DNA of 57,683 nt. Source: Girardia tigrina. Taxonomy: Eukaryota. Numbering within the stretch: the first letter of the stretch is position 1; each line of letters begins with the position of its first letter. Below are positions 2,147 through 56,488 of the stretch, in pieces. The stretch lies in contig MQRK01202569.1 of the NCBI GenBank assembly GCA_001938485.1, positions 1-57,683 of the forward strand, written 5' to 3'. The translations under genes and the position numbers were made by a program. The notes under the pieces were generated by a model. It did not search any database and was not told the DNA's origin. It was given only the letters and a program-made list of their open reading frames with translations.

Positions 2147-2289
2147 ATTAGAATTTCTGACCCGGGGAGACCAAATTGGATTTTTTTCGTATTTTCTTGT
2201 CTATTCCCCTATTGAAAATTTGATAGAGGTTGACAAACAGATAAAAGATGTAATTTTCAGACTACCCTCCATCATTGATCCATTCAATA
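2147..2289 (+). CDS. Gene A exon, C-terminal half of a divergent SEA-like domain
   Basis: tttcag|...|gtaaat; LEFLTRGDQIGFFSYFLVYSPIENLIEVDKQIKDVIFRLPSIIDPFN; homologous and equal in length to 46640-46782(-). Confidence 0.85.
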
Positions 2290-4800
2290 GTAAATTACTT
2301 TCTTTTTTAAATAAATCATGTATTTACAAATAAATAAATCATTTAGCCATCATTGATAAATACCACCGATATTCTGGAGGTATTGATTTTTTTAATTGTC
2401 GAAATATAATTAACTTATATATTGTATATTTTTATATAATTTAGATGTTTATCCCTTCAACAATTCAGCAAATACAAACGATACAACTATATTCCCAACA
2501 ACACCACCAGCTACCACAAAACATTCAGCATCAACAACTCAAAGTATATGGACTGACGATATTTATACATTAAACAGTCCAGCAACTACTATCAAACCAC
2601 CAACCACAATAAATACAGCAACTACAACACCAATAACTACAGAAACTACATCGACAACCACACCTACGACTACAACAACAACTACAATACAAATAACCAC
2701 AAATACTTTTTGGGATACTTATTCTGATATATTTGGCCCTCAAAAAAGTACTAAAAAACCATCAACTCCAACAACTACAACACCAATAACTACAGAAACT
2801 ACATCGACAACCACACCTACGACTACAACAACAACTATAATACCAACAACCACTACACCAACAACTACAATACCAAAAACCACCACACCAACAATTAAAA
2901 CAACCACTACACCAACTACTACTACAACAACTTCCACACCAAGAATTACGGCTACCACTACACCAACAACTACAGCGAAAATCCTTTCTACAACTACGGT
3001 TGCAAATGCAAAACCTGGAGAGACTGAGTCTGGAGTTAACGTCAAGTGTTCTTTCAACGAGACTTATAAACCAGAATATAATGATTCTAATTCCAAGGAA
3101 TTCCAAGAATACTCGAAATCAATCATTGACAAATTACTTGAAACGTTATTGAAGACTGCTTTGAAAATTTTAAAGATAGTGATCAAATCAATAAGGTAAG
3201 TTATCCTTTATAAAGTTTAATTTTTATTTCTCTTCTGAATTTTTGAAATACATTGATTTAATATATAATTTATCTCAGTGGGTTGTAATAGGTTGTGTCA
3301 CTAAGCGTATACTCAGGGTATCGCCCCTCCACACTTAAACTATAGATTTATTCTTATTTATTCACCATCAATAAAATCGAAAGTACAAGAAAAAACGATT
3401 TAACTAAGTGTCAGCGTGTTACAAGATAAATTTTGATCTTAAACATCGCTTATTTAGTATTTTAGCGATAAATTGATTAAAAATATTATTACAACATTTT
3501 TTGATCTGATTTTTCAAAGAAATATATGCATTTTATGAGACTGAGATTTTCAGAGAAAACTACGGTGGGTTCGTTTACAACAATGAACAGAAAGATTAGG
3601 TTTTAGGTGGACATTCACTATCTCGTTAGTATGAACTTTTTTACCATTCTCCAGTTTTTCAATGTTTGTTTTCATAATCGGACTTGATATAATTATTTTG
3701 AAAAAAGGATCTTAAGAGCAGGGTTTTTTTAGGTTTTTAGCTGGATGACCTAAGAAAGTGTGGTTGTACAGTATAACATATTTATTTTCACTCAAAATTG
3801 TTACATCACACATGCACACTTGATTTAAAGGTTTAAGAACATAAGAATGTGCTAAACCTATTAAATAAGTATACAATTATCAATGACCTTGTGTAGGAGC
3901 GTGTATGTGCGAGTGGGAGAGAGTGTAATTGGTATAGCAGTGTGTGTATTTTTAATAATATAAATAACTATATTTTTGGGTGTACATTGTACACCTAAAA
4001 TGGCCTTAAAAAACACTGTTAAGAGCGTTATTGATGTTTTATTTCATCTCCAGTTATAAAACTTTGCAAACTTATTTAAATAAAATATTTTAGCATATTA
4101 AAATTAAAAAATCTTTTAATTAATTAATTTTAGATTTTTTTAGTTTTTATTTATATTTAAATATATGTAGGTGATATATTTTTGTTACTATTTATAAGCA
4201 AAAGTATACGAATTTTATTAATAAATGGAATGGAGATTTTTATTAGTAATCAGGATAACTCTCAAATAGGTATCTAGCTCAAATAGTTTATTAAAATATT
4301 TTTATTAATAAAATAATGTTATAACCTACAATAGCTGTTGTATTTTTTGAGGATGTTGTTGAGCTACCTCCACGTTTACGACTGCATATGTGTCCACATA
4401 CACGCCATAAGATTTATTTGATTGTTTGGCGTTAGTTTTAATGTTAGTTTATAAAGTGTTAGTTGTAATGGACTTATTTATTTATTTTAATAAATCAAGG
4501 AATTATTGGATAATAAGAGCAAAATGTTTTAGATTTAATTAAAGATTTGAAAACTGTTTCACTGTTCTCCATTTTTAATGTCTATTAATGGCTTTAGTGT
4601 CTTATCTATAATAATTCCACAATTATTTGAATGACATCCAAAGTTCAAACCTGCCTCTCAGATAAATAGAAAGCGATTTGTGTATTACAAGGTAATCTGG
4701 TTTATAAATGTAATTGTCACGAGTGTTAAATATCACAATGAAGTCTATCGAGTAAGGTTCTTGATCATTGATTACATTGTAAAGGCAAAATCTTAAAAAG

Positions 4801-4852
<52 letters not shown>

Positions 4853-7800: not shown

Positions 7801-10800
7801 GCTTTATGGATTATTTGGAAAATATTTTTTTGGAAAAAGATTAGATGAACAAAGAAGCATTCCAAGACATCTCATTTTTCAATGGAACCAATATGACAAT
7901 ACTATGAATAATTTTAATAAAACTAAAAACAATGTTGAAGGTTAATATAAGTCATGCCTTATCTCGAATTTTAAACTGTGGTCACTAAAATTTTGGAAGG
8001 TTTTTGGAAGCAATTAAAAGGATATATAAAATTCAAGAGTAAAAATTATCCAGGAAAATACTGATATCGCACCAAATACACGAAGAAAAAATTACCTTCA
8101 ATTGAATGAAAGGATAACAAATATTGTCTCCACATATAATTCAGCTCAAAAATTTCGATATTTATCAAATCTTAGTTTAATATTTCATTTCTAAAAATAA
8201 AGTTTAGTTATTTATTAAGTTATTTATTTTATTTTTAATTTATGTTATATCTTACATTACTTTCAATTATGAAAGCTTTTATAATATATTCAACTACGTA
8301 AAGTTTTGTTGTGCCAAGTTGTCTCATTGCCAATTTGATTTTTGTTCATTAAGGCGATTATCGCTGTAATCATGTATTGAAAAATTATTTATTTAACTTA
8401 ATTAAGTTAATTAATATAATTTCTATTTAAATTCTTTTCCATGTCAATATTATATATTATATTATATATTGAAATATGTAGCTGATGAATCTGCGCCTTC
8501 CCCATACGACGTCAGATCACGGAGGTCTGATACTACTAATCATGGATGAATGTCTCCTTTTATCAATCTTTTATAATAAAATATTTATTCTATAAATTCA
8601 TACGTTATAATTAATTTCTTTCATGTTTTTTTTCATTGATTTTCACCACTTCGAAATATCGTTTGAAATCTATCAAAAATTAATCAAATATTTTTGCCAT
8701 TACATACGAATATATTGATGCAGTACTATGTATCCTCGAATTTTTTTATATTCATTCACTTATTTAAAATAAAAGTATGTATTTATAAATTTTGATTTTT
8801 CACGAAAAAATTAATTTAATGAAAATAAATTTTAAATTTTACAAAACTAATTTCAACAATGTTTTCGTTACTTTTTTTAATAATACGACAAAATGTCTTT
8901 AAACTTGGTGATTTTATTTTTGTTTAAAGATATTTTGAGTCTTTTAACCCTTCGAAGCAAGGAACAAGTATTTTGTAGAAAACTTAAGGTTTTAATTAGT
9001 GGTAAGAGTTACGGCCTTCAATTCATTGTTACATTTAACTTTTTATGAATTTATTTATCTGCTTTAGTTTTACAGTATTTCATTAAAATAAAATGAAAAC
9101 TAATTTTATATTATGACAATATTTTCAAATCAGACAGGGTAGTGTCATCGTAGACATGGACGTTATTACGGCATCGTCCAACCCAATGAATCAAAGTATT
9201 CTAGCAAATATTGTGTCCAACGCAACCTCTGAAGCATTCAACAATACGGCCAAAATATTGAGCGGTAAGTATCATTGAACCAAGTGTAAATATTGATCAA
9301 CAAATTATGTATAATTGCAGCATCTGTTACTTACGCTTTTGTTGTTACTGAAGCTTCAAGTAAGTATCAAAATATTTATGATTAAATTATTTAATTTTCT
9401 ATTTAAATATCAACGTCTTATTAGGGTCTATAATTATTAGGGTTTATAATTATACGAATAATAAGAAAAAAATTTATTCATTTAATAAATTAAAATTTAA
9501 AATCTTTTATATGCTTTTTTATTAAAGTTATGAAAGAATTTCGATAAAATATTAAATTAAAAATCCAAATATTAATTTTAAATGACAAATATTATAAATT
9601 ATATTACCTTAAACAGTTTTGAGGCAAAGAGGTTTTTAATTTTAAAAAAAATATTTTTTTAATATTTTATTTTTTTATTTTTTCTATTTTTGAAAATTTT
9701 TTATTTATTTTTGTAAGTTTTCATTTTTTAATCTAGGCTGACTAATTATTTGAATAACTTTTTTAGTTTATAAAAATATGTTGTAGAATTAATACTAAAA
9801 ACAAAAGGCGTTAATTACAAAATTAATAATTGAAAATTATACATATAATTTATAATTAATTAATTACATGTATATAATTTAAGATAATGTAACAAAATAG
9901 TTGCAAATATTGTAATATATTTTGAATTAAAATACACTTGGAAAAATTAGTCCATATTAATCAATAAACATAAAAAGTTTTTACTTTTAATATTTATACT
10001 GATCTACTAATTTATCAAATTTTTACAGGTAGAAAAACCAATCTATATAAAATTTTGTTAAATTTATAAATAAAAAATACTTTATTTTTTATAAATTGTA
10101 ACTTTTAATTTTTTTATTAAAAACAAAACCCATCCATTTAAATATATATTTATAGACAATACATTTCGACAGATCAACCGTCATGTTCAGGTCCCTGATT
10201 AATAATTAATTCGCCTGTATATAAATACAAAAATAACGATTATGTAATCGATTGCATGAAATCATGCTAATCAAAAGTTCTTAATAAGCTGCTTGAGACT
10301 GCCGATTGAACATGTTATCCAGACAATTGCTCTCAAAACTTTTCTCCTCAAAAATTCCTCCCCATAAAATTGTCCCTCTCATAATTGCTCCTTATTAAAA
10401 TTGCTCCCTTAATTATTGCTCCCTAAAAACTGCTACCCGTATAAAAATTACTCCATGAAATACTTGGTTTCGGTTAGGGTTAAGGTTAACGTTTATGTTA
10501 AGGGTTAGCGTTAGGGTTACTGGGTTAGGGTTAGGGTTAAGGTTAGCGTTAGCGTTAGAGTTAGGGTTAGGGTTATGTCCAGGGTTAAGATAAGGGTTAC
10601 AGGTTTTAAGATTATGGTTAAACCTTACCTTAAGAGATTTTATCATAAAAACTGTACTATATGTTATGCATCGATATTATACTTGCAGTTATTTTTTCTA
10701 TTAAAATTCACCCTTAATAAATGACCTTGGTTTTGGTCAATCAGGTCAGATTTTTTTGTAACAGAAATTTTGTAAAAATAGATTTTTCTTAAAAAAAATC

Positions 10801-13800
10801 TGCGGATCATCAGCTGAGAAACCCTTGTCAATTTTTTTCCATTTTCCCCAAGAAATGAAAGTTCATGTATCCAAATTCATTTAGTTTTATTTAGTCGATC
10901 AAATTTGATGAATACCCTCGAGCAATTCGTCAAAGAGATATTTCGGTGAGCAGTTGTAACCGGAGCAATTTTTATGAGCGCATCAAGATAATGATTATTG
11001 ATAAAATGAAATCCGGATGATAATTTTCTATTAAAAACAAAACTCATACATTAATAAATATGTTTATAGACAATATATTTCGATTTTTAAATGGATGAGT
11101 TTTGTTTTTGATAGAAAATTATCATCTAGATTTCATTTTATCAATAATTATCCTGATGCACTCAAACCTTTCAGAAGATATATGAGAATATTCAATTCAT
11201 TGAGAAGAAGAGAAATGAATATCTGCTTCCTGGAAACATGAGTTGAGGAGAAGATAATTCCTAGTTTTATTTTCAAATCAAAGCTCCATGAATGTCTACA
11301 AAGTGAAGATGTAGAAATGATCCACAAAAGGATACTTGGAAGACTGATCGACAAAGAAAAAAGAGCGAGAAACGACATTGTGTAGGCGCTGACTATAATT
11401 CGATTCGCGTTATATGATGGAAGTGGTGATTTTCAATTTTGTTTATGTGTTATCATGTCAATCAATAATTCTAATAATTTAAATAAAGGTAAATTTGCTA
11501 CACAGAATAAGAAATTAAATAGTTAAGGAAAATTATTTGGAGTTTTTAAATTTAAAGTTTAAAACACTAGTATTAATTTGAGTAATGTAAATTTATCTAA
11601 GAAGTACATCGATATATTGAAATATGGACCTAAATTTCAATAAAATCAATATTTGATAAATTAAAAGTGCAATCAAAGATTAAAGCAATGTGTGACTATT
11701 ATTTGTCTAATATTTCTTATTTTCATAGTTTTAATTTCGCATATTTTAAGAATGTTTTGAATAAAAATACTTCAGATTATGTAAATAAAAATATTAAGCA
11801 AAATAACAAAGATTTTTTGATTTAAAAAAAATTATCTAAGAAAAATATTAATGTATGTAAATTTGATAAAGGGAATGGTTTAGTCGTTTTAAATAAGGAG
11901 GATTATTTCAATAAATGGATTAATGTTCTCAAAGGGCCTCAATTTATAAAAATTAATAAGTTTCGTGAAAACGGTAAACTTCCTCCGATAAAAGATGATG
12001 AATTTCTTACTTCTTTATTGTCAAATCTTAATTTATTTTAAGCATGTTTTGAATAAAAATATTTTATTTAATATTTTTGCAAATTTACCATAGATTAATA
12101 TTTTAAGATAGTGATGAACGAAATGCCTTTGAGAATATCATATAAATTTATTTTCAAAGATCAATTTAATACATTTACAAAAGAATCAGTACTATTAAGT
12201 TATAGTCACATGTATTCAAAGTTATATTAACCCTTAGTAGCCTGATTTACGAAAGTGATTTATTTTTAATATTACTGTGTTTGCTTGAAGGTCTAGATGA
12301 AGGGAAAAATAGCTAAAAAAATCACAATATTTATTTTACATTTTTATTTAGAAAAAAAACAGGTATCAATTTTGATACTTCAGACATTAACGCCATAAAG
12401 AACGCTTAAAAGATTGGTATCAAAATTGAAACTCTAGGTTATTAAGGGTTAACATAATACAAAAATTAATATAATTAAAAGAAACAAAATAATCAAAATA
12501 AAAAAATTAAAATGAAATCCGGATAATAATTTTCGATTAAAAAACTTCATCCATTAAAAAATATATTTATAAACAATATATTTCGACGGATCAACTGTTA
12601 TCTTCAGGTCACTAATTAATAATCAATTCACCTGTATAGAAATACAAAAATGGTGATTATGTAATCAATTGCATGAAATCATGCAAATAAAAAATTCTCA
12701 ATAATCTGGTTGAGACTGTCGAATAAACATGGTATCCCGACAATTGCTCTAAAAAACTGCTCCTCTTATTATTGCTCCTTATTAAAATTCAAAACTATCA
12801 CATCACAAAAATTCAAGGGATAATAAAGGTTTTAATTTTGAATCTAGATATTTCGCTATCATACATTGAGATTTTCTAATCATCGATAAAATGGGTCTCA
12901 AAAGTATTCCATTTTTATGTACCTTTGGAAGTCCATATACAATATAATTAAAAGAAACAAAATAAAAAAAATTAAAATGAAATCCGGATGATAATTTTCG
13001 ATTAAAAAAACTCATCCATTAAAAATATATTTATAAACAATATATTTCGACGGATCAACCGTTATCTTCAGGTCACTAATTAATAATCAATTCACCTGTA
13101 CATAAATCCAAAAATGGTGATTATAATGATGTACTGTTTTTATCATTTTGTGTTCATTATGTTACTCAAACATTCTCTATGAAAACTTAAACTATAATCT
13201 ATGATGTGAAAATTAGAGACATTTTCTAAACTCAGTGAACTAAGTCTTTTGTCATAACTTTTCTATATATCTCACCACAAAATTCTTAATTTATACAAGC
13301 TCAAGATAATGCAAGAAACATTGAAATATGTCCCATGATCATAGTTTTCAATATGTTAAATTTAATAAATAAATTATTATTATTAAATAATTTAATCTTT
13401 ATATTTTAAGCTTTATCGACTAACTCCAAAGCTACTTCTACAGTTCCAGGTGATCTTAACAATAATTTATTAATAAATCATTTGATTTTTTTCATATTTA
13501 TATATTTAAAAATCGACGGTTAGAAACAAGTTCTTCTGATCTATAATTTAATAAATGTTCTTAAAATTTATTTATCCTCATTTTTCAAACTTATTCTTAA
13601 ATATTTTCTTCTATTTTTGTATACCCATAATACATTTTTTACAGTAATTACAGACTAAACTAGTTTATCCCCTGATACAGACTTTGTTGTTTTAATATGG
13701 ATATGATTTTTGTGAAAAAACTCTTATAAATTACTGTTCTGTGTAGTAATTCTCAACATAACGGCCCCCAATTCATCAACAATTGATAACCAATGAATAA

Positions 13801-19800: not shown

Positions 19801-20134
19801 GCCTGTCCAAAATGAAACATACATCCCCACTGAGTAACTAATGGGAAATGTAGAATTGCTCCATTAATGAGTACTGACTCGTAATCGGACAAAATTTTTT
19901 GTGTGCGAAATCTTTCATAAGTTTTTAAAATTTCAAACATACGATTGTACGTAAATTAATTCTTTTTCGATAAAAGAAAGTATACTAGTGGAGCAAATAC
20001 ATTATTATGTATTGTATGAATTGTATACAACCGTTTTAATAAAATATTTTGGGTCAAGTAAATAAAATAATCCTCAAATTTACACACGTAAATATATTAA
20101 TCCTTCAAATATATATGGCTCTTTTTACGTGCTA

Positions 20135-20177
<43 letters not shown>

Positions 20178-20301: not shown

Positions 20302-20336
<35 letters not shown>

Positions 20337-31830: not shown

Positions 31831-33918
31831 TTAAAACTCGGTTTTATCCTTGTTTATATTAAATTTATAATCTGACTCCAAAACGACCAAAATGTTTCTT
31901 TCAAGAATAATATATGAAGGATGAACACAAATCCTTTTAATATACTTTATTTGCAAATGACAATTTGAGCACAAAATTAAATCTAAACTTTAACAATAAA
32001 TCAATATTTTGAAGCACACTCCACCGGCACAAACCAATATCAATTTAGAACGAGCAATATCTGAAAATTGAGATTAAATTTTTCTCCTTTACAAGATACT
32101 AAATTTGTTAAGTAAACAAAGATTAAAGGAAGAAAGATTACCGTAAATCATAATAAAGTTTAAAGATTTAATAGGGTCCACAAGTATAATTTTGTCTGTA
32201 ATTTTGTTGTGAATATGACTTGTGAAGGACTCATGTGAAAAGCTCAATCCTTTAAATTTTTGAATAAATAATTTTTATAAATAATATTTGAAATAAGTAA
32301 ATATTTAAAATCAAAAGTTGTCTAAACATTTATAATTTAAAAATATATCGTAATTAATTTTAATAAGTTATTTTCGAGAATAATCGAATTTTATTTGAAG
32401 AGTAAAAAAAACTTAAAATGAAATTAATTGGGAAATAATGAATTTTTAAATAATTGATTAAAAATATATATATATATATATATATAAATACAAGGATAAA
32501 ATAGGTTGTAATAATTTTAAAAATTATTCTAAATAGTTTTGTAAAAAAAATTTAATTAAGACTTATCATTAATGCATCGTAATAATAATAAAATTTGTAA
32601 ATTACTATAAAATACTCTAAATTATTTTTTGGTATTTAAATTGTATGGTATTTAAAATAATTGTAGGTAAAAATGCTTTTAAATATTAATAANNNNNNNN
32701 NNNNNNNNNNNNNNNNNNNNNNNNNNNNNNNNNNNNNNNNNNTATAAAATACTCTAAATTATTTTTTGGTATTTAAATTGTATGGTATTTAAAATAATTG
32801 TAGGTAAAAATGCTTTTAAATATTAATAATAAAATTCGTAAATATTGAAAAAAAATAAAACATTAAAATCTTTATTAATTAGAAATGTTTCCCCAAAAAA
32901 AAAAGAAATAACATTAAACTAATTCTAAAATAATAAAAAATCATTAAGGTTAATTTATTAAAAATATGACAACAACATTTTTATTAAATAGAATTAAAAA
33001 ATTTTCAAATAAATAGAATTAAAAATTTTCAATTTTAAAATCACTTACCAGTTATTTATATTTATAATTTCATATTTTTATATAAGAATCTGGTCATAAA
33101 GAAAACGTTAGAAAAGTTCCTCTAAAAAAATTTTTATTAAAAAACAACAATTTTTATTACAACAAAAATTGTTTGAATAATTGTTAATTGTGTTATTAAT
33201 AAATTTTTGGTGATTAATGAATTCTAATATTGATCAAGAACCCAACATGACTGAAATAATTATTGTTTATATACTACTTTTTAAATAACCTTGAAAATTA
33301 GTTTGCTAAAACAATTCTAAAAATATTTACAAATATTCTACAAATTTTATTACAATAACTATTATTATAAAAAAATTATTAATTTTAACCAGAGAATTAT
33401 TTTTAATTTTTCTATTAGATTTCAAAATTTTAATTTATATTTATCGGAACCCCAACACATTGCAACCCAAATGGTACTGGCTCAGCGCAACTGACTGATG
33501 ATTCGAAATTCGAATCCCATCTACAATAATCCATGTGTATCTATAACCAATTATAGTTCGGTACAAAATCAAATTGGTAGTTTGAGGCTTTTTATCAATG
33601 CTTCATTTTATAAATGCATCAGACTTAATAAATAAGATTTCATTGTTACAGATTTAATAAGAAACGAAAACATTATAAAAGCTATATGTAATATTAATCA
33701 AAATCCTTCGAAAATACGTAAAATTTCTTCAATAATTCAATTTGGTTTTATTTTTTGTTCCTTTAAAATTCAATGACATATGTTAAGTAACATAAAAAAT
33801 ATAAAATAAAGACAAAACGAACAAACCATTATTTTATTAAAAATTCATAGAATCAGATTTTCGTTTAAAGTAAAAAACTCAGTAATATGTTAAAAGAATT
33901 TTAATAAGTGTGAATATT

Positions 33919-36900: not shown

Positions 36901-39900
36901 NNNNNNNNNNNNNNNNNNNNNNNNNNNNNNNNNNNNNNNNNNNNNNNNNNNNNNNNNNNNNNNNNNNNNNNNNNNNNNNNNNNNNTAATGCCAAAAACTC
37001 ACATATATTAAAATAATTGCCACCACAATTATAACAGTTACACAAACAATTATCAACGCAATGCCCCAAGGTGGAAAGTTTGAATCCAAATAAGTACTTC
37101 CAGGAGTAGCTGAAATTTAATGAAAATAATTTAAAATTTTAATAATTAATGAAAAGAATATCAAGTTTTGTGAAATTGAATTGCTAATTTCGCAAAAAAA
37201 CAATATGAAATTCTAAATGTTTTATAAAAAACCGTACAAAACAGATATTTAAATCAATATTTAGTTAGATCCTCTTTGGCTTTTAATACAACAATAAATT
37301 GATTAGATATGCTTCTAGCTTCAGTCGCCAGAAGTTCATTCTGAAGTTTCCTGTTTCCTACTCTAATGATTCTTGCCAACAATTCTGTTTTAATTCGTGG
37401 CTGCTTGATTATTATCCACAAATTCTTGATCAGGTTGAGATCGGACCTATTACAAGGCCATGGAATAATAGATCTAGTACAGTTGGCTGGTGAGGAATCA
37501 TCTTGAAAGATCCTTTGAATGTATGTGAAATATCTCACTTTGTATGGATTATTCTCGTCTGTATTACTTTCATATATTCTTATGCATTTCATGTTTTCTC
37601 GCCAAGATGTAAACATCCAGTTGCACTATGGCAAATTGAATCCTCAAAATCATTAATAATGGCGTAAATTTTATTGTCAGAGTAATAAAATCATTATTCA
37701 CAAATCAAAGGACTCAGTGTGGTCTTCTTTGAGTCTAAATAAATTCTATCTTGCTCTTATCACAGTGATGTTTTTCCAGAATTCAAGTGGAAGATCCTCA
37801 TGGCGATGACCCTATTTGATAATTTTGTTAAAAGTGTTTTTCAGCTTTCTACTTTTTTCGAATTGTAAAGGTTTTAAATTGATGCTTGTTGATTTAGAAA
37901 ATTCGCTCCTTAACTCATTTGATGTTTCTTCCTATTTTTCAGTGAGAAGCAACAAAAAATATCGATTCTAAGTTCAAATATAAATGATTGTGTTTTTAAA
38001 TAATTATCAGAAATATAAAGGTCAATTTTTCAGTACTGATCTAGTTTCCACTGATGATGAAGGTTGATGATCCGTCGAAATTAATAGTAATAAATTTTGA
38101 TGATTGTTTTTTTATCTTTTAAATGAAATTATTTTGCAATTATCTATATGAATCCAAGTCATTATTTTTCCATTTAATGTAGGATTCTTAGGAGTCAATC
38201 GAAAATTTGTTTTTTTTAAAAATATGACGTATTAGGTGTACAAGTATGAAATGCGGATTTCAGAAAACGGATTGTGCACAATGCAAAAAGTAGGTCAACG
38301 GTTAGGCAATGATGTCATAATATTGAGTAATTATGTAGTGTCTCATACGTAACTCATAAATTGATAAAGCGTTTTAATAATTGTTGTATTTCTGTNNNNN
38401 NNNNNNNNNNNNNNNNNNNNNNNNNNNNNNNNNNNNNNNNNNNNNNNNNNNNNNNNNNNNNNNNNNNNNNNNNNNNNNNNNNNNNNNNNNNNNNNNNNNN
38501 NNNNNNNNNNNNNNNNNNNNNNNNNNNNNNNNNNNNNNNNNNNNNNNNNNNNNNNNNNNNNNNNNNNNNNNNNNNNNNNNNNNNNNNNNNNNNNNNNNNN
38601 NNNNNNNNNNNNNNNNNNNNNNNNNNNNNNNNNNNNNNNNNNNNNNNNNNNNNNNNNNNNNNNNNNNNNNNNNNNNNNNNNNNNNNNNNNNNNNNNNNNN
38701 NNNNNNNNNNNNNNNNNNNNNNNNNNNNNNNNNNNNNNNNNNNNNNNNNNNNNNNNNNNNNNNNNNNNNNNNNNNNNNNNNNNNNNNNNNNNNNNNNNNN
38801 NNNNNNNNNNNNNNNNNNNNNNNNNNNNNNNNNNNNNNNNNNNNNNNNNNNNNNNNNNNNNNNNNNNNNNNNNNNNNNNNNNNNNNNNNNNNNNNNNNNN
38901 NNNNNNNNNNNNNNNNNNNNNNNNNNNNNNNNNNNNNNNNNNNNNNNNNNNNNNNNNNNNNNNNNNNNNNNNNNNNNNNNNNNNNNNNNNNNNNNNNNNN
39001 NNNNNNNNNNNNNNNNNNNNNNNNNNNNNNNNNNNNNNNNNNNNNNNNNNNNNNNNNNNNNNNNNNNNNNNNNNNNNNNNNNNNNNNNNNNNNNNNNNNN
39101 NNNNNNNNNNNNNNNNNNNNNNNNNNNNNNNNNNNNNNNNNNNNNNNNNNNNNNNNNNNNNNNNNNNNNNNNNNNNNNNNNNNNNNNNNNNNNNNNNNNN
39201 NNNNNNNNNNNNNNNNNNNNNNNNNNNNNNNNNNNNNNNNNNNNNNNNNNNNNNNNNNNNNNNNNNNNNNNNNNNNNNNNNNNNNNNNNNNNNNNNNNNN
39301 NNNNNNNNNNNNNNNNNNNNNNNNNNNNNNNNNNNNNNNNNNNNNNNNNNNNNNNNNNNNNNNNNNNNNNNNNNNNNNNNNAAATGTATCATTAGTAATG
39401 GAGCATATTTTGAATAAAGCTTTTTTATCGTTCTTTTGTTTTTAACGTATTTCTTTTCAAAATTTAATCCGCATTTCATACTTGTACACCTAATATTAAT
39501 CTTCTAGATAGTAATTTTTTAAGTCATTAATTAATACTCATTTGGGCAAAATGTAAGCTCAATAGGAATACGGGATGTAGATAAAAAATCTATTGCGCAA
39601 GTACGAATAAAATTACAGACAAATGGACAAACAGACAGGGACAAAAACCAGTTAATAAAAACGTGTTAAAATGGCATTTATATGCTTTATTAAGATTTTT
39701 ATTTGAATAGAAAAAAAATCATTTTTATCGTAAGCAATTTTAGATTTTAAATGAAATAAAAAATCATTAAATACGTAATCCACGAGCAAGAGATAAACGT
39801 CACTCGAAATATTTATCCCAAAACAGTTACACGGATATCTACTGAAACTGAGGTATTTCATCATCGTCAACATTTGAACGAAATAATAATTTAGGAGTTC

Positions 39901-42900
39901 CGCTCTACCCGAATCAACCAGATTGAAAAGCTTTATTATAGCAGAGTATTCATTTGGCCTATCCATTATTTCTTGAATGAATTCTTATTATCAAAAGACT
40001 GACTGAACATATGTCGGAAAGAATCTCGTTGCCAAAGTCATCTAGGCAATACATCGTGACTCCCAAGTCATTGCACATTAAATAAGTTTTCGACTGTATC
40101 CGATCCACTACTGTTCAAAGAATATATAATAAAACTTTTATGTGGGTCAGAATGTTGTTCCTTTACAGTCTCATAAAATTGAGTGTGATCACCATTTTTT
40201 TCTCTTTCCTTTTATTGTTGATAATAGAATTACTTAAAATTATTTAAAATGACGTTATTTATTATTATTTACTCGATGAAAATTTATATCATTTTATTTA
40301 TTTATATCAGATTTTATTTTAATCAAATAATAAAAATAAACACATAATATAATAATGTAATAAATTTTAAATTACCATTTTCTGAAGGTGCATTTGACTT
40401 GAAACACAATTATTAAAATTGTTCCTTTGGATTTTTACTAGAAGGTGATTCTTTTAAATGTCAAATTCTTTCTCAAATAAATCAAGAACTTGATTAGGTT
40501 TTCTAGTAAATCTTGTATATCACTTTAACGATCAAATCCTTGTACATTGGGGAAGCTAATCAACGAAAGAGAAAAACGTCACCAATGTTCCGTAGAAAAA
40601 TGCTACAAGGAGTATTCCGAAAAGAAGGAACTGAACAGACACACCAAAAAGGATCATGCGGTGTCCGCTTCCGTTAATCCTGATCAACCCAACGAGACAC
40701 AACAAGAGCAATTGCCATTTCCATGTGCATTATGTAAAAAGTCATACAAAATGAAGGGGTGGCTGACAAGGCACCTCTACCGGGATTATAAATTGAAGGA
40801 TACAGAAGAAATTGGAGAACTGACAATGACACCATCGCAAACCACTTCAACAAATATCCTAGATGAAAGAGTCATAGAAAACGTCAACATTCCAGGCAAC
40901 CAGATGTTTGATTAAGAAATTGGGAAGCCTCACAGCGGTGAATTCTGAGCCCATTGAACCGGCGTCTGTTTTTTCGGAGAAGATCGATTATCAATCAGAT
41001 GATAATAAAGAAAATGTAAATCAATTTTCAAATATCAAGTCGCTAAATATCAAAAAGGAACCGTCAAGTTCTCTACCTCAATCGTTTAATTGCGCTAATA
41101 CCGTTATCGACGAATCGACGAACGACAATCAATCGTTAATCAATCCAAAACAAATGGATGATCCAATGAATAAATCTTTGAATGATGTCGTTGTTATGGC
41201 ATCTGCCGAACAGGTCGATCAATCTCTAAAATTACGAATCCGTCTACCGACCAATGATGACAAAGCCGCTAAAACGAATAGAAAGAGTGGCAGCAGAAAA
41301 AGAAACCAAAAAGAAAAAGAATCAAAAACAAATTAATATCATCGAGCATTCATTTATACAAAAGAAATCTGAATCTGTGACTTGTTTAGTCGAAGTGATC
41401 AAAGTCGCCAGAGAACAGCAGCAATTGTCGAAATAATTGAGTTCGATTTAGTTAATTACAATGTCGAGAGACACATTCCACCACCGTATGTCGTATTGTT
41501 CCATTTCTTGGTTTATGAGGCCAATGATGCCGTTTGTATGTTTGGGAATGAGCGGGGCATTGTTCGGGCGATTTTGTTCCCTACTAAAACAGAGTGTGAT
41601 CGACTGTGCACAATTATTAACGGGCTCGTTAATGAGTTGAAAAATGAATCGTTCAAAGCTTCCTATTTCTCTGATCCCAATAAACGATCTGAGGTGCTTC
41701 AAGAAATGAGAGCCGGTGAGCGTCGAAATCTGAGTTCCCCTCGTCCCGCTGCGCCCACTCTTGTATCATCACCAGATTCAATCTGTCTATCTCGACAGCG
41801 GTAAAGGAAGCGATAGATACTGAAAAAACACATCTTACTTTTAGGATTACAGATCTAACTGTCCCTTTCGCGGTTGTACGAAGTCCATGAATACAGCGAA
41901 AGGTATGCAAAACCATGGTTTTACAACCCATATGTGGTAATTTCTCACAGGGAAACCGAAAAAAATCTAGGAGACCGAAACTATCCGACCTAGTAGGAGG
42001 CCCATCGGGAGGCTGCTAGTAATTCTTTAGTTTTGGTGGACTTTCTAAAGAGCCTAGAGGCTCAATACCATTCGAAAGAAAATGAAGGCCCACATTAGGG
42101 AAACAAAATTTAATCTATATACTAAAACAGTGAATAATATTTAATTTAGTAGAAATAGCTCGATTCTTTATCACATTAAAAATTCAATGATAAAGAGAAG
42201 TTTAGTCTGATTTTTCAGTCTTGAAGAAAACTTTTGTCCTATATCATGAATGGATAATCACTGATGTATCATTAATAAAATCATTTAAAACAAATGCTTA
42301 AATGTTCAAACTGAGTTGTCAAATCATATTAAAGGTTTCTGAAAATTTATTAATTGCGTAGTTACTATAAATCATAATATAAGTCACAAATGACGATGTC
42401 GTAATATTGAAACATGTTTTATTAAATTAAAAATTATTAAAATGGTGTATTTTATTTTCTGTTTTTATTTATAAATTGTCATTAACCCCTTTACCGTGGA
42501 AAAAAAATTTTTTTTTGGAAACTGTGTAATTGTTTTCTTTCATTATTTGATTTGTTATGTTGTCCTGACAAAATAAAACATCATTGTGAATGAAAATGAG
42601 TTGACATTTAGAATTTATGAGGTAAATATAAAGAAGGCAATTTTTGGTATTTTTTCAAATTTTTCATATGACGAGTTAACTCGTGACACACAGTAAAGGG
42701 GTTAAATCTGAACAATAATGATTAAATACATTGAACTAAAATTAAATTTTTAATTCGTTACAAATATTTTTAATCTTACTTGAAGTTGGTATATAAAGGA
42801 CAGTCGAATTTACTGTAATTAATCAATATAAAATATTCTTTAATCTCTCAATAAACTTACTATTCAAAATAGTCATGGAACTGTCGAACGCCTTAGGTGC

Positions 42901-45900
42901 GTTTTCTTTCACAATCTGTGTCACACTATCCGAATTAACTGGTGTCGCAGAGGCGGTAGTAATCTCCATATCGACCACCACACTACCTTCTCTGAATAGA
43001 AATATTTTCTCAATTTTGTTATTCTCATAAATATTCTCAAATTAAGATAACTAACAAATGATACCAATTTATAAATATCTTTCATCGTAAAATGTCTAAA
43101 GATTTTTCAGCTCTCAGATATTTGATAAAGAAAGTAGAAGATCAAATGCGTTTTGTTTTGAAATTATATTGGGTTGGCCAAAAAGTCATTGCGTTTTTGA
43201 GTACGTCCTAATAAAAAGCTTGAAAATATATAAACGATGTGACAAAATTTAAATTCAATTATATATTCTGAAACCTTAATTTTCAGACTATGTTTATACA
43301 AAATATTAATTGATTTTTTTGATTTATTACTTTACCGTCAATTCGAAATGGAAAATCAAAATGAGCATATTCGTCATGTTTTGTTGCATTATTTTCGCAA
43401 AGGGAAAACCGCTGTGCAAGCTCATAAGAAGATATGTTTTGTATATGGTAGTGACTCCTTAAACCTTCGACAGTGTCAATACTGGTTTTTTAAATTTCGT
43501 TCTGAAAAATTTCATCTGAAAGATGCACCACGCTCCGGTCGACCAGTCGAAGTTGAATCGAGAATATCGAGAATCTTTATGTTTATTGCAAGAAAATAAG
43601 GAAAATTTTCAAAATTTTTAAAAGAACATGTTTAAAAATTCGGTAATTTTATTGTTATTAATTAAGTTTTTAAAATGTCTACTTCTAATTTTTCAAGTGA
43701 GAATTACCACAAACCATATTGAAATTATCAATTTTTTGGCATTTATTTAAAATAAATTTGATAAATGACTCTTATTTCCAGGTACACTGAGTACATATTG
43801 TTAGGAATTAAAAATGTTAGCAAAATTTTTGAAAGAAGGTTACATTAAATATGTACAAATTAAAATTTTTATATAATTAAACATGTAACGTTTGAAAAAA
43901 ATAAAATTACTAAAATTAAGAAGATCTAATTAAATTGCTAATAAAAATTTTTTGAGAGTTTTAATATAATATAAAAAGTAAAAAAAAGTGTATAATTTTT
44001 ATGTGAAACGATTAAATATTTTAAAGTGTTATCGTAATTAAAAATTGATTTATAGAAGTAATGAAAAAATCAAATATGAATATTTATAAGTAATTTTATC
44101 TATATCGGTTTAAGATTTATAAAACAAATAGTTTCTCAAAAAAACAATAAATTTGTTTAAATATTGGATTTAAACATTTTTTGTGGCATAATAAAAGTTT
44201 TAATGTATGCTACTAATAATTCCGACTATGTTCCAAGAACCACTAATACATATTATTAAACATTGTGTAATAATTAGCATTTACTTGTTCTGAAGTCTCC
44301 TTAACTTCTGTTAGAAATATAATGGGCCAAAAATACTTGAGAAATAAATTCACTGATTTTTGAGTCTATGTTAAAAAGATTAAAGCAAATACTTACATTA
44401 TTGAATTAAACTTAATTGCCAGAATCCTTAAAATTGTATTCACAAATGCTGCAACCAATTTGTTATAGATTGATTTTGTGTACGATTGATACTCAACAGA
44501 ATTGGTGTCACCGTATTCTTTTTTATATGTTTCATTAAATGAGCATTTCATGTCAACCTTAGTTATAGTATCAGTATTTTTCGTAATTGAAACAGTAGTT
44601 GTTATGGTAGTTGTTGATAATGTTGTTGGAGTTGTTGATGTAGTAGATGTAGAGGATGAAGATGAACGTGTCGGAGTGGTTAATGAAGTTGTTGATGAAG
44701 GAGTTGGAGATGATAAACCAGTTGTACTTGGTGATAAAGTAGTAGGCGATGTTGATGTTGTAGTTGTGGTTGTTAATGTAGAAGATGAAGATGAAGGTGT
44801 CGAAGTGGTTGATGAAGTAATTGTAGTTGTAGGTAAAATAGTTGGAGTTGTTGATGAAAGAGTTGCTGTTGTTGATTTAATATTTGAAGATAATGATGAG
44901 GAAGTTTGAATTGTGGAGGAAGTTATTATCGGTATTGATGTAGTAGTTATAGTTGATGAAGTAGTTGTGGTTGTTAAATAATTTGTATCTATAAAAATGT
45001 GAAAAATATATTTAAAAAAAGGTATTTAATAATATAATTTTATTGCTATTGATAATTATTTTTAAGATTCATAAATATCTACAAAACCATTTTAAATCCG
45101 CAGGTCATTTGAAAGAAAGTATATGAGCTAGGTTGGTTCTACATTTCCGATTTTTACATTTTCCATATCCCTCCCTTCTAATTATCAAACATCAAAGATT
45201 TTCCGGTTGAGTAATAAAAGTGTGTTCAAATGAAATTAAGTTAAGCAAAATGTAAATATTGGTTTCATTAGCCATTAATTTCCTATTTTGAAATAATTTT
45301 ACTTGGAGTACAAAATGTCTTATGACCATGAATGTAGTGTCAAATTACACAGAACGGAAAGCAGTGATTCATATACATTATAGGACTTTCGTAGCTAGTT
45401 TTCAAACACAGTTAAATTGAAGGTGCTTTAGAGCTTTTTGTTATTTGTTTCTATCCAACTTTTGCGCAACATAAAAAAATAGTAAACAAGAATATTTTTT
45501 CACAAATTAACTGAAATTCTCACTTTTACAGAAACTGTAGTGCAAAACCTTAGACAATTTCTTACTAAACAGAAGTTTTGATTAGGATCTATGATAACAT
45601 GGAGAATAAATTGTATTTACCTCTTCCTTTATTAAAAGGACATTGTATTCTTGCATAAATTCAACCACTCATTACACACTATCATTGACAACACAGACCT
45701 CTCTAACGACATAGAAAGCCATTTGGATTTGAAGCCCAAATGATAGGGTCAGTGGCGTTTTTGTTCGTGTAGTTTTGTCGTGCTACCATCTATTACTGAG
45801 ATGAACATTATAAAGGAAGAGTGGGTTTTTTGCCTTAGGACATTTTGCTATTCTTTACTCGTCCGATTTGGTTGTGTGTGTGATCACTAATACAAGTAAG

Positions 45901-48900
45901 AAGATGATGGTGTCTCTCTAATGTACCAATTTTGACATCAAAAATTAGATGCAACATTAGCTAGCACACCATAATTAGTTTTTGATTTAAACGAGAAAAG
46001 CTATGTTTTAAAAAAGTTTTGATAAAACACAAAATTAATCATTTACAAGAGATACATCATGATGTCTATAAAAAACAAATCCATGATCTTTTCACAATAA
46101 ATGAATCATAAAAATACTAAGGAGAATATACAACCATAAATCTTAATATTGTTTAATGATATTTAGGTACTGGAGTGAATTGTAAAACAACCGCGTTTTA
46201 GAATATAAGACCACCCTAAATATGAAAATGTGTCAATTTTTTGGTGATTTGTAAACTTGAATATGAGGCTATAATTTTATATTCAAGAAGAAATTAAGTA
46301 CAAAAATGGTCATATTTAGGGTGGTCTTATATTCGAGAACAACCGGTAGTAACGTTTTTTTACCACATGTAATGCTAATGTTTCAAAGATGTACCGATAA
46401 AAGTGATAGTTGGTCGTTTCTTTCACTTTCAAACATATATGAAATTAATAAGCCTAAATTAATCACTTCAATAAAGAATATATTTGTATGAGGTTCGTTA
46501 TTTGCTTTAGATTGCTTTAAATTTAATATTATCTTTTAAATAAATAATAATATTGATACCTGTTAAATATCGATAATATCTTTCAATGTTGGCTAAATGA
46601 TTTAATCTGTGAATTAGATCTAAAAATTAAGAAACATACTATTAAATGGATCAACAGTGGAGGGTAGAGACAGAAAAATGTTTTGAATTTGTCTTTGAAC
46701 TTCAAATAAGTTGTCATTTGTAGATGAAACGAGAAAATATGAAAGAATTCCATTCCGATTTTCACTAATTAGAGATTCCAATCTAAAAAATTAAAAAAAT
46801 ATATTTAAATAGTCATAAGATAACAAATTCAGTGCCACGGAGATTACTTTTACAATTAAGTGTTAGGGGTTTTTTTTGGTGACTTTTAAATTTTTGAATA
46901 ATTAATTTGTAATATCATATTTATAATTAAATAAGTTCAAATATAATTTTTTTAAAAAATAAATATTTCGGATTAATAAAAAAATTGTAATTAAATTTTA
47001 ATTTATTGGACTAGAGTTATTTTAGAAATAAATAATTCGGAGTAACAAACATTGTAAATAAAATTAAGTTGAAAAATAAAAAATCATAATGTTTTATTAC
47101 AATTAATTGTAACTCAAAATTTCTATTAAAAAATAATTATAATTGAATGTTTTAAACAATTAATGAAGAAAAAAATATTTGGAAATTTAATTTTGACAGT
47201 AGATGTACCATTCAAATATTTTAAAGATCTAAAATTACAGCTGTGGACAAAAGTCTGTTGACTTTCACATTTTCTACACATTAAGTGCACATTAAGTTCT
47301 TGCCTCCAAACACCACCATGAGAAGTGAAAATTATTTAAATGTGTTGAAAGAAAGGCTACAAACCATGATGAATATTCGAGGAACAAAAATATTCATGCA
47401 TGATGGTGCTCCTTGCCACCAAGCAGTCTTAGTCAAACGCTGGTTAGCAAGTCAAGGTATCGAAATCCTCTCACCANNNNNNNNNNNNNNNNNNNNNNNN
47501 NNNNNNNNNNNNNNNNNNNNNNNNNNNNNNNNNNNNNNNNNNNNNNNNNNNNNNNNNNNNNNNNNNNNNNNNNNNNNNNNNNNNNNNNNNNNNNNNNNNN
47601 NNNNNNNNNNNNNNNNNNNNNNNNNNNNNNNTACACCCGTTACATTATTTAAATGTTATAACTATTCTGCTGTAAATGTCATAAATTTATCAAATATATT
47701 GTGCTAAAATGTGAGAGTCAACAGACTTTTGTCCACAGCTGTATATTTAAGTTAAATGGTTTTAAATAGTATAGTGAAATAACAGCATCTAAATAACTTT
47801 AAATTAATAGAAATCGTCGTAATTTAACTAAAATAGTTTGAAAATGATTTAAAATAAAACAGTAATTATGTAGATTTTTTATAATGTACTTTAAAGATTT
47901 TTTATAAAATATTAAAATATTAATCTATAAATTAACGTAATCAAAAAATTCATAATTAAATTTTTAATTAATGTTTTTAATAAATAAATTATCAGTATTA
48001 TAATCTAGTATTTTTATGTATAATTAATCTGGTCAAAAGAAAACAAAAGAAAAGTTCCTCGAGAAAAATTGTTTAAATAATTGTTGTTGTTAGAGAAAGA
48101 AAATTTTGTGTTGATGAATTCTATTATTGATCAAGAACCCAACATTAAGTAAATTAACAAATTAGTAAATAATAATTTTGTAAAATTTGTTGTGTATTAG
48201 TCGTTTTTAAGTGGTATAAGTTAATATATATTGCACAAAAATGTAAGTTTTTGATGTTTTATATTTAGCAGAAAGTTTTACTGATTAATAATTCTTTTCA
48301 TATAAATTGTTGGGTATTCAAAAATATTCTTTTGTTAATCAATTTAAATAAGTATTCCAATATAATTATCTGACTCCTTTCAAATGGTTCTTCCAACTTT
48401 TGAATGAAAAATATTAATTTGGTCAATCCTCTCTTGAGGTTTTAATTTCTTTTAAATGAATCTCGACAGAGATTATTTCCCAAATAGTAACAATAGTAAT
48501 AAGTCAAATGAATTCTGTTTCAAAAACTTTATTCAATTGATTTACAAAATTCTTCCAATCCAAAGAAAAATACAACGTATGGTTAATAATGGAGGAATCC
48601 AAAATATTTAAAAAAAAATCTTTTAAAAGGATTTAACTTTCTGTAAAAATTTGTTTTTGAATAAACCTAAACTCAAACTCAAGCTGAGAGATTTTAATTT
48701 AAATTTTAGGGTATTTATACCCGTTTTTTATTATATAATAAAAAAATATTTAAAGTTAAAATTGACATTTTATAATTAAAAAAATTTTATTTTTATTATT
48801 ATTATTTTTTGGATTATTATTTATAAATTATTAAATAGTTGGGCTTAATTGCCCATTTCAAGATTAAACTCAATTTATTTTAATGGGCTTAGTGCCCAAT

Positions 48901-54900: not shown

Positions 54901-56488
54901 CACAATTTTTAATTACAAAAAAGCTATAACAGAATTATTAAAAAAATATTTTCTGTTTTCAATTGAAGATAATTCTTATGTTGAAACTGACGAATTTCGA
55001 CAATTTAATTTAGTAAACTTATGATTTAGAGAGGATGTCAAAGATTTTTTATCTAAATACGAAATAATTTTTTAAGTCATTCACATCAGTGAAGAAATTT
55101 AGTCAACAATTGTGAAGGTATTTTAAATCGAAACCTTCTGGGGACCTATGAAGATATGGACAGATTGCGAAAGATTCTCAAAATATTGATGTCTTTAATT
55201 AAGAACTTGTTATATTTAAACATTATTTTATTTCGGTATAAAAAATCTATTTTCCAAGTCTTTTATCAAAATTTTCGGCATAAAATACTACAATTTCTGA
55301 ACATTAAACAAAATTTTTGATATTTATGAGGAGTTAGTTAAAATTTTCACTCGCCAAAATAATTTAGTAATTTTTTTAAATTTGAAAATTTTATAAATTA
55401 AATAAATACAAAAATTTATCAAACTAAAAAAAGTTTAAATGATTTTTAAATGAAAACAAACAAAAATAAATAATTTTAAAAAATCAAAAAAATGTTTATA
55501 TTCATAACAATTCGTATATTTTAATAAAAGAATTAAAATAAGAATTTTAAAATAAATAATAAACTGATTAAAATTTATTATATATTTAAGAAATAATTTT
55601 TGATTTTATGATAAAATTTTATAAATGAATTTTATAATTTTACAAATTAAATTGAAAGAAAAAATTTAAATAATGGATTTTTGCAAAATGATTAAATAAA
55701 CGGAAAATTTGTTCATGTATGTGTATTATTTTAATTAATAAAGTTTTGCGATAAATATAAATTCTGAAATTTTGGATAACGCAAATGACAAATACAACTA
55801 ACAATATTATTTTACCCTTCAGTTTTGTATCTTAAACTTCTTAAAAGTTGTTTTTAATATAGAAAAACAATTTAAATATTTAAAATAATTATTGATTTGT
55901 TGTATTTTGTAGTCAATAAATAAAGCGAATATAAAATACCCAAAATTGAAGTAATTTTTGTCCATCAAAATGAGGTTGGATTGCATCAAACGAGACATGA
56001 TATAATATTGAATGTTCTCTATATAACTTCGATTAAGGGAAGAATATGTCGATGTAACATCTTCATTAATGGAAATAAAAATGTTTGCTTTGTAAATGTT
56101 GTAAATAACAACAACTAAAAGAAATTAAGTAATTCAATAAAACATTGAAAAAAATATACGATTAAACAAATTATAAAGTGATGTCCATGGGGATATCATT
56201 GATACAATGTTATTGAGATCAGAAAGTAATGGACTTCTTGTGAGCATTGAACCATGGAATTCGACAACGCCGGTTGCATAACTAAACATAACTTTATGTA
56301 ACATATTTTTCCAAAACTACTTAACTTGATATTTAAAACTTCTGCTTGAAAGAAAATTCCATATGGTAAAAGCAAATTAATGATGTTGAAATAAACTGAG
56401 TTAATGTAATTTGCGAGAGCTTCTTGTTGATACCCTTTGATCATGTAGCTTGGTACATTCATCGAGCCAGTTACATAAAATTCATAAA
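33919..56488 (-). CDS. Gene B: type-I transmembrane mucin with three SEA/SEA-like domains (MUC1-like architecture)
   Basis: Exons 56488-56326, 56281-56160, 56114-55940, 46782-46640, 46592-46560, 44988-44397, 42991-42861, 42812-42780, 37109-37003, candidate 33960-33919; all GT-AG and phase-compatible. Start/signal exon not securely found. Confidence 0.85.
34744..35976 (+). mobile_element. Mariner (Mos1/mauritiana-like), full-length size, frameshifted
   Basis: Perfect TIR TTAGGTGTATAACTTAGTTTTTTGGATTTT, TA TSD; IVTGDEKWIYY, LLHDNTRPH. Confidence 0.93.
37003..37109 (-). CDS. Gene B transmembrane exon
   Basis: tttcag|...TAT|gtgagt; TPGSTYLDSNFPPWGIALIIVCVTVIIVVAIILIY. Confidence 0.88.
37250..37930 (-). 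mobile_element. Tc1-like transposase remnant
   Basis: IFQDDSSPAN, WPCNRSDLNLIKNLW, KAKEDLTKY. Confidence 0.75.
38232..39493. mobile_element. Mariner-sized element, interior gapped
   Basis: Perfect TIR TTAGGTGTACAAGTATGAAATGCGGATT, TA TSD, 1262 bp. Confidence 0.9.
40547..42020 (+). mobile_element. Frameshifted C2H2 zinc-finger ORF, probably the 5' part of a non-LTR retrotransposon
   Basis: HQCSVEKCYKEYSEKKELNRHTKKDH and FPCALCKKSYKMKGWLTRHL; intronless; broken into several ORFs; lies inside a gene B intron; no RT seen. Confidence 0.55.
42486..42701. mobile_element. piggyBac-type MITE
   Basis: TTAA|CCCCTTTACCGTG ... CACAGTAAAGGGG|TTAA. Confidence 0.8.
42780..42812 (-). CDS. Gene B 33-bp exon
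   Basis: ttacag|...|gtaaga; INSTVLYIPTS; phase 1-1. Confidence 0.85.
42861..42991 (-). CDS. Gene B exon, C-half of SEA with GSVVV
   Basis: ttcag|...|gtaagt; (I)EGSVVVDMEITTASATPVNSDSVTQIVKENAPKAFDSSMTILN. Confidence 0.93.
43169..43560 (+). mobile_element. 5' fragment of a mellifera-type mariner
   Basis: TIR TTGGGTTGGCCAAAAAGTCATTGCG; MENQNEHIRHVLLHYFRKGK...DAPRSGRP. Confidence 0.88.
44397..44988 (-). CDS. Gene B large exon: Ser/Thr mucin tract plus N-half of SEA
   Basis: 592-bp open frame DTNYLTTTTTSSTITT...VDMKCSFNETYKKEYGDTNSVEYQSYTKSIYNKLVAAF...NSI; atag acceptor, gtaagt donor. Confidence 0.92.
46191..46346. mobile_element. pogo/Tigger-like MITE
   Basis: Inverted GAATATAAGACCACCCTAAATATGA / TCATATTTAGGGTGGTCTTATATTC. 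Confidence 0.75.
46560..46782 (-). CDS. Gene B exons 46782-46640 and 46592-46560
   Basis: LESLISENRNGILSYFLVSSTNDNLFEVQRQIQNIFLSLPSTVDPFN and TNIERYYRYLT; 47-bp intron; homologous to gene A 2147-2379. Confidence 0.88.
47238..47741 (+). mobile_element. Internally deleted Tc1-like element
   Basis: TA|CAGCTGTGGACAAAAGTCTGTTGACT ... AGTCAACAGACTTTTGTCCACAGCTG|TA; FMHDGAPCHQA. Confidence 0.9.
48838..49035. repeat. Tandem GGGCATAGTTGCCCAATTATTT palindromic units (probable TE subterminal repeats)
   Basis: About 5 copies next to a gap. Confidence 0.65.
50330..51286 (+). mobile_element. Degenerate mariner
   Basis: INEVWSEGSV, IDNDQLKELVEAD, PKFHHKKVLITV; right TIR ...CAGCAACCTAATA. Confidence 0.8.
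53015..54830. mobile_element. Non-autonomous hAT element
   Basis: TIR CAGTGCTCGAAGTG / CACTTCGAGCCCTG; perfect 8-bp TSD GTTTGTAC (53007-53014, 54831-54838); CCGGTATG subterminal repeats. Confidence 0.9.
55940..56488 (-). CDS. Gene B 5' exons (163, 122, 175 bp) encoding divergent SEA-like domains
   Basis: Three open exons separated by 44- and 45-bp GT-AG introns: YEFYVTGSMNV...EALANYINSVYFNIINLL...QAEVLNIN|YATGVVEFHGSML...LYNLFN|LVVIYNIYKANIFISINE...YIENIQYYIMSRL...YFNFG. The last donor is phase 2, matching the 46782 acceptor. Confidence 0.72.

What the first reader, a model, noticed from the sequence alone, without database searches (positions are those of the whole stretch)
2147..56488. Hidden convergent pair of MUC1-like, putatively self-cleaving SEA mucins invisible to the ORF track
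Seen: two tail-to-tail spliced paralogs with identical exon sizes (143, 33, 131 bp) and intron phases. Their mucin-proximal SEA domains align without gaps (about 47/97 identical by hand count) and carry GSVIV (A) and GSVVV (B). In both genes an intron lies a few bases before the motif, so it is separated from the N-half of its domain by 5.9 kb (A) or 1.4 kb (B). Established: G/SVVV is the SEA autoproteolysis site of MUC1-type membrane mucins. Inference: this is a lineage-specific family of sheddable surface-coat mucins in an AT-rich invertebrate, possibly a parasite host-interface system.
Basis: partly seen in the sequence, partly recalled or inferred. Interest (0 to 1): 0.85.

Follow-up and report, generated by a model that had tools for sequence, protein, structure and literature searches.

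The report
Planarian MUC1-type SEA membrane mucin pair
These are two real genes of a free-living freshwater flatworm (Girardia) for sugar-coated cell-surface proteins built like human MUC1; they belong to a family of tens of copies in this genome, and their odd-looking split cleavage motif is an old gene layout also seen in fish.

Summary
Two convergent spliced paralogues share exon sizes 143/33/131 nt and intron phases, with 47/97 identical SEA residues and GSVIV/GSVVV motifs. All four internal junctions of gene B, including 44397>42991, occur in spliced contigs of public runs. Gene A's junction 3195>9134 was not read-tested.

New here: B has a strong transmembrane-exon candidate (37109-37003). 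A third paralogue has a TM exon plus a basic, Tyr-bearing tail. A may end in a GPI-type signal (weak).

The interpretation shrinks in three ways. The host is a free-living Girardia planarian, not a parasite (two published 24-nt piwi primers match exactly). The intron 4 nt before the G/S motif is also present in catfish and wrasse SEA genes, so it is ancestral. PTS-SEA-TM mucins are already described in a sea anemone, and a SEA family in Schistosoma japonicum.

The genome holds tens of such loci, and this scan noted the family on other contigs before (s1-691890, s1-697915). Autoproteolysis is plausible (about 0.6) but untested. Verdict: new members of a known kind, low interest.

The parts
2147..2289 (+). 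Gene A exon (143 nt, phase 2>1), second half of an upstream globular domain; A's more 5' exons were not found in the window
   Evidence: 47% identical to the B exon
2347..2379 (+). Gene A 33-nt symmetric exon
   Evidence: homologous to the read-confirmed B exon
2445..3195 (+). Gene A PTS mucin (T 45%, P 11%, S 7% over 196 aa) plus SEA N-half (3035-3195)
   Evidence: Pfam SEA E=7e-5 on the half domain
9134..9264 (+). Gene A SEA C-half with IRQG/SVIV motif
   Evidence: junction from 3195 not read-tested
9321..9359 (+). Gene A 39-nt symmetric stalk exon
   Evidence: best-scoring splice sites on the + strand
13411..13449 (+). Candidate A stalk microexon (S/T-rich, weak donor)
   Evidence: inferred only
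21371..21535 (+). Candidate A terminal exons (21371-21448 and 21519-21535) giving a hydrophobic C-terminus with no tail, GPI-signal-like
   Evidence: weak, not read-tested, no paralogue found
37003..37109 (-). Gene B transmembrane exon candidate (107 nt, phase 1>0)
   Evidence: highest hydropathy (3.75) with canonical splice sites; paralogue B' has a TM exon at a similar distance; join to 42780 not shown by reads
42780..42812 (-). Gene B 33-nt stalk exon
   Evidence: spliced contigs in X1 and X10
42861..42991 (-). Gene B SEA C-half with IIEG/SVVV motif
   Evidence: spliced contigs in X1 and X10; Pfam SEA weak
44397..44988 (-). Gene B PTS mucin (T 43%, S 27%, P 7% over 143 aa) plus SEA N-half (44557-44397)
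46560..46592 (-). Gene B 33-nt symmetric exon
   Evidence: all four runs
46640..46782 (-). Gene B 143-nt exon
   Evidence: all four runs
55940..56488 (-). Three upstream exons, probably of B (56488-56326, 56281-56160, 56114-55940); with the 143-nt exon they would make two globular domains with SEA-like exon phases but no G/S motif
   Evidence: paralogue on C177780 is 64-73% identical; transcript ends fit a 55940>46782 join indirectly; SEA homology not detected

Best explanation
Genes A and B are diverged paralogous cell-surface mucins of a free-living Girardia planarian, with the layout [signal peptide, not located] - upstream globular domains - O-glycosylated PTS rod - SEA domain - short stalk - anchor. 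The anchor is a TM helix in B and in paralogue B', and possibly GPI in A. Shown: exon structure and expression of B, SEA homology, motif, purifying selection, family of tens of loci, host genus. Inferred from MUC1 biology: the protein enters the ER; strain in the beta2-beta3 hairpin drives an N-to-O acyl shift and cleavage at G/S; the halves stay bound; the PTS rod is glycosylated and adds to the epithelial glycocalyx; pulling force or microbial binding releases the outer part. I put actual cleavage at about 0.6. The intron before the motif is an ancestral SEA feature with no mechanistic role.
For: Spliced contigs for four B junctions. Pfam SEA on the N-halves, 8 of 12 family members. A profile of the N-halves retrieves three multi-SEA proteins among its four hits in 1.84 billion proteins; hhalign probability 95.8%; the ESM Atlas lists a SEA cluster at 0.90. 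pS 0.68-0.81 against pN 0.25-0.36 for A vs B, and dN/dS 0.24-0.43 for B vs B'. TM exons and a B' tail with basic stop-transfer and Tyr motifs. 51 N-half matches at E<0.01 in the genome. Same intron in fish. Girardia primers match. The motif fits the frpG/Svvv consensus given in PMC3886910.
Against: No half-domain reaches the Pfam cut-off on its own (best 23.3 bits in the window against 26.4). The C-half alone is weak (hhalign E=0.01, probability 4%). No solved SEA structure is hit significantly. The full domain could not be folded. A's long junction, A's anchor, B's SEA-to-TM join, B's tail and both signal peptides are not shown. B has Ile in place of the usual Arg at -3. An analogous site in MUC16 was not cleaved (PMC4456727).
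Confidence: 0.8

Rival explanations
1. The genes are SEA-PTS surface mucins, but the SEA domain is not cleaved. The G/S motif is kept for the hairpin structure, and any shedding is by sheddases or phospholipase.
For: The MUC16 site analogous to GSVVV showed no cleavage (PMC4456727). Cleavage depends on loop strain more than on the motif (PMC10556640). B lacks the -3 Arg.
Against: G and S are invariant in all 13 aligned family members, and the loop has MUC1-like length with no insertion.
Confidence: 0.35
2. Gene A is a secreted or decaying copy, or its two SEA halves belong to different genes joined by the scaffold gap at 4853-4902.
For: No TM exon found for A; no read test of A; an LTR element sits downstream at about 15.4-17.4 kb.
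Against: Open frame and strong splice sites; purifying selection; (TA)n on both sides of the gap; N-half and C-half trees both give the same three-member subfamily A, B, B'.
Confidence: 0.15
3. A parasite surface-coat system at the host interface.
For: Only the analogy with the S. japonicum tegumental SEA family (PMC3886910).
Against: Two 24-nt Girardia piwi primers from PMC5750089 match this genome exactly and the reversed controls give none. Girardia is free-living.
Confidence: 0.02

Closest known systems
Vertebrate SEA-type transmembrane mucins (MUC1; also MUC3/12/13/17)
   Same: PTS region, then a SEA domain with G/S-V-x-V, then TM helix and a Tyr-bearing tail (tail seen in B'). The phase-2 intron before the motif is shared with fish SEA genes.
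   Different: No sign of orthology. Extra globular domains lie N-terminal to the PTS. The PTS is short (143-196 aa), there is no EGF module, and there are tens of paralogues. Cleavage is untested.
Cnidarian mucin1-like proteins (Actinia tenebrosa, PMC9080433)
   Same: Invertebrate PTS-SEA-TM architecture found by sequence alone.
   Different: About one candidate per transcriptome there, against a large family here.
Schistosoma japonicum SEA-domain gene family (PMC3886910)
   Same: Flatworm multi-copy SEA family with the G/S consensus and bands read as cleavage products.
   Different: That family is from a parasite, is described as heme- and glycosaminoglycan-binding and dispersed by retrotransposon-mediated duplication; no sequence relation was tested here.
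Fish and Xenopus SEA-repeat mucin-like proteins (P0001, P0004/P0006; PMC4948705)
   Same: Best sequence matches to the N-half profile; identical intron position.
   Different: They carry many alternating SEA and PTS repeats rather than one motif-bearing SEA.

Membership tests
SEA domain (Pfam PF01390) | Sequence match to the SEA profile | tested here: met
   N-halves E=7e-5 (A) and 5e-4 (B), C-halves E=0.04-0.06 at the adjoining profile positions; hhalign 95.8%. Each half is below the curated cut-off; the joined search was left out.
SEA domain (Pfam PF01390) | Ferredoxin-like SEA fold | tested here: inconclusive
   Only the N-half could be folded; it gave helices and no sheet. Best PDB hit is a 57-residue ADGRF1 chain at E=0.61.
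SEA-type membrane mucin (MUC1-like) | PTS-rich domain next to the SEA | tested here: met
   P+T+S is 63% in A and 77% in B.
SEA-type membrane mucin (MUC1-like) | G/S-V-x-V motif in register | tested here: met
   IRQG/SVIV and IIEG/SVVV; the B junction is confirmed by contigs.
SEA-type membrane mucin (MUC1-like) | Single TM helix after the SEA (gene B) | tested here: met
   Exon 37109-37003, with a matching exon in B'. The splice join itself is inferred.
SEA-type membrane mucin (MUC1-like) | Single TM helix after the SEA (gene A) | tested here: inconclusive
   None found; weak GPI-like candidate.
SEA-type membrane mucin (MUC1-like) | Cytoplasmic tail | tested here: inconclusive
   Candidate in B'; none found for B, whose TM exon is followed by an N gap that was not filled.
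SEA-type membrane mucin (MUC1-like) | N-terminal signal peptide | not testable with these tools
   About 700 nt of B's transcript 5' of the mapped exons could not be placed in the window.
SEA-type membrane mucin (MUC1-like) | Autoproteolysis, O-glycosylation and shedding | not testable with these tools
   Needs protein work.
SEA domain (upstream domains at 55940-56488 plus the 143-nt exon) | Sequence match to SEA profiles | tested here: not met
   No Pfam hit, hhalign probability under 1%, no Atlas hit. Only the exon phases resemble SEA.
Parasite surface-coat family | Host organism is a parasite | tested here: not met
   Girardia primers match.

The most novel reading that the evidence does not exclude
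Planarians carry an undescribed, strongly expanded family (tens of loci) of truly self-cleaving SEA mucins in both TM/signalling and GPI forms, forming a sheddable glycocalyx whose role could be tested by RNAi in a whole animal.
Probability: 0.35. Interest if true: 0.45.

Novelty: new member of a known kind. Interest (0 to 1): 0.22.

Why it matters
It supplies correct gene models for unannotated planarian surface mucins and shows that the family is large. If cleavage is real, planarians offer an RNAi-tractable model for MUC1-type barrier and shedding biology outside vertebrates. It does not reveal a new mechanism or a parasite system.

Tried and rejected
Parasite origin: rejected by the primer matches (a third primer gave no match). 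A mariner transposase was no help for naming the host. Special meaning of the split motif: rejected by the fish genes. No close full-length homologue exists in the protein collections, so no natural full-length protein could be folded. PDB sequence searches were not significant. The half-domain model was uninformative, so no fold search was run. SEA identity of the upstream domains was not detectable. Searches for A's TM exon and B's tail exon failed. Rfam gave no hit in the window. N stretches were not filled. Two papers were not held. My three literature searches on planarian or invertebrate SEA mucins showed no planarian SEA-mucin paper, but the library is incomplete.
Full report
Observation. 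Gene A (+) has exons 2147-2289, 2347-2379, 2445-3195, 9134-9264 and 9321-9359. Gene B (-) has exons 46782-46640, 46592-46560, 44988-44397, 42991-42861 and 42812-42780. All have AG/GT ends, phases are 2,1,1,2,1 in both, and neither frame has a stop. The SEA regions align without gaps at 47/97 identity and carry IRQG/SVIV and IIEG/SVVV. Motif plus acceptor occurs twice in the window against 0.1 expected from shuffles. Synonymous divergence between A and B is near saturation (pS 0.68-0.81) while pN is 0.25-0.36, so these are old paralogues under purifying selection. A start-codon ORF list misses the sense frames, which is normal for internal exons.

Expression. Assembled contigs of four public runs from four studies skip B's introns with CT..AC ends. 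Joints 46640^46592 and 46560^44988 appear in all four runs; 44397^42991 and 42861^42812 appear in X1 and X10 with 0-1 mismatches. The runs are only guessed to be RNA, but precise intron removal supports it. The X10 contig has about 1,150 nt more on the 5' side and 191 nt on the 3' side. Only one read-laying run was allowed, so A's junction 3195>9134 is untested.

Gaps. No identified exon crosses a gap. Gap 4853-4902 is inside A's intron with (TA)n on both sides. Trees of the N-halves and of the C-halves each give one three-member subfamily, A, B and B', which supports pairing A's halves. Gap 32693-32742 has an exact 87-nt overlap. Gaps 34935-35115 and 35829-35852 sit within one mariner with perfect inverted ends, and gap 38396-39381 within a 1,266-nt element with inverted ends. 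Gap 36805-36985 is unbridged, so the tail-to-tail arrangement depends on the scaffold there.

SEA identity. Searched exon by exon, the N-halves match Pfam SEA (E=7e-5 and 5e-4; 8 of 12 family members) and the C-halves match the adjoining profile positions weakly. A profile of three N-halves searched against 1.84 billion proteins gave four hits, three of them multi-SEA proteins and one a chance archaeal repeat protein. Profile-profile comparison gave 95.8% for the N-half and a weak but correctly registered match for the C-half. The half-domain model is uninformative.

Anchors and further exons. Paralogue B' has its PTS and N-half at the end of contig C222418 and its C-half at the start of C225456; linking the two contigs is my inference. 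B' has a TM exon about 4.8 kb after the SEA and a candidate tail exon with a basic cluster and two Tyr motifs. Using it, I found B's TM exon at 37109-37003, the most hydrophobic exon candidate in the region, with canonical sites. Its join to 42780 is inferred. B's tail was not found. For A no TM exon was found; exons 21371-21448 and 21519-21535 would give a tail-less hydrophobic end like a GPI signal, which is weak inference. Three exons at 56488-55940 are conserved in contig C177780. Transcript pieces run 6 nt past 46782 with one mismatch, as a join from 55940 predicts. These exons have SEA-like phases but no detectable SEA similarity and no G/S motif.

Family. The genome gives 75 N-half matches (51 at E<0.01) and 56 C-half matches at E<=1. 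Several are identical and probably haplotype copies, so the honest count is tens of loci. All 25 sampled motif-bearing loci (19 distinct peptides) have an acceptor 4 nt before the Gly codon. Their motifs are GSIIV, GSVVV, GSVIV, GSVKV and one GSTVA.

The split motif is ancestral. In a catfish SEA-repeat gene, all six domains have a phase-2 intron 4 nt before the Gly of (R/K)NG/SIL. In a wrasse gene, all 15 repeats found have the phase-2 intron at the matching end of the N-half. The layout is therefore shared with vertebrate SEA genes. The 5.9-kb and 1.4-kb lengths are just expanded introns; most sampled paralogues have 45-48 nt there.

Host. The assembly is 1.43 Gb in 255,254 contigs and the window is 27% GC. 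Two 24-nt primers for Girardia piwi1 and piwi2 from PMC5750089 match exactly, with no control matches; a third did not match. That paper reports about 99% identity between sequences labelled G. dorotocephala and G. tigrina, so I name the genus only. Girardia is a free-living planarian (own knowledge), which removes the parasite reading.

Mechanism. By analogy with MUC1 (PMC6491460, PMC10556640), the SEA domain would cleave itself at G/S through strain in a short hairpin. The halves would stay bound, and force or microbial binding would release the glycosylated rod. Gly and Ser are invariant across the family alignment and the loop has no insertion, which favours this. But cleavage depends on strain more than on sequence (PMC10556640), an analogous MUC16 site was not cleaved (PMC4456727), and B lacks the -3 Arg. 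I put cleavage at about 0.6.

Comparison and verdict. PTS-SEA-TM mucins are reported in a sea anemone (PMC9080433), and a multi-copy SEA family with the same consensus in S. japonicum (PMC3886910). I found no paper on planarian SEA mucins in the held library. The scan had already noted this family on other contigs. The genes are real and unannotated, work most likely like MUC1, and are not shown to be MUC1 orthologues. They are new members of a known kind; interest 0.22.

Noticed in passing
L035:44-163 (G000:C225456:10044-10163): Candidate cytoplasmic tail exon of paralogue B' with a basic stop-transfer cluster and two Tyr motifs, one fitting the ITIM pattern (V-x-Y-x-x-V) and a Grb2-type YxN.
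   Followed up: partly
G000:C225456:36965-37081 (-) and C230456:48247-48357 (-): Weak matches to the B' tail (E=6.2 and 0.18). The first faces B' on the same contig, hinting at a second convergent mucin pair; could not be fetched.
   Followed up: no
G000:C219340: Three SEA N-halves on one contig, same strand (14764, 30628, 44557), so clustered paralogues also occur in tandem. Several family members have PTS-bearing open frames of 700-1,278 codons.
   Followed up: no
window 44567-44988: Run X6 (another organism code) has in-frame length changes of +3, -6 and +3 nt in B's PTS exon, as expected of mucin length polymorphism.
   Followed up: no
window 15441-17392 (+): Decayed LTR retroelement (gag, zinc knuckle, reverse transcriptase, integrase) downstream of A's SEA exon.
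   Followed up: no
window 34741-35979, 38230-39495, 43243-43596, 47230-47749: Mariner/Tc1-type elements or remnants with terminal inverted repeats, three of them spanning assembly gaps.
   Followed up: partly
window 10110-10338, 12468-13124, 52147-52222: Dispersed repeat copies noted earlier as possible hammerheads (s1-707559); Rfam gave no hit at gathering thresholds.
   Followed up: partly
window 29662-31080 (+): Broken ORFs with a coiled-coil-like stretch and an LKGG followed by Met (also noted as s1-707503); no Pfam hit.
   Followed up: no
window 40529-41801 (+): C2H2 zinc-finger-bearing, transposon-like ORF pieces inside B's SEA-to-TM intron.
   Followed up: no
window 10472-10600: Degenerate TTAGGG-type repeat inside a repeat element.
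   Followed up: no
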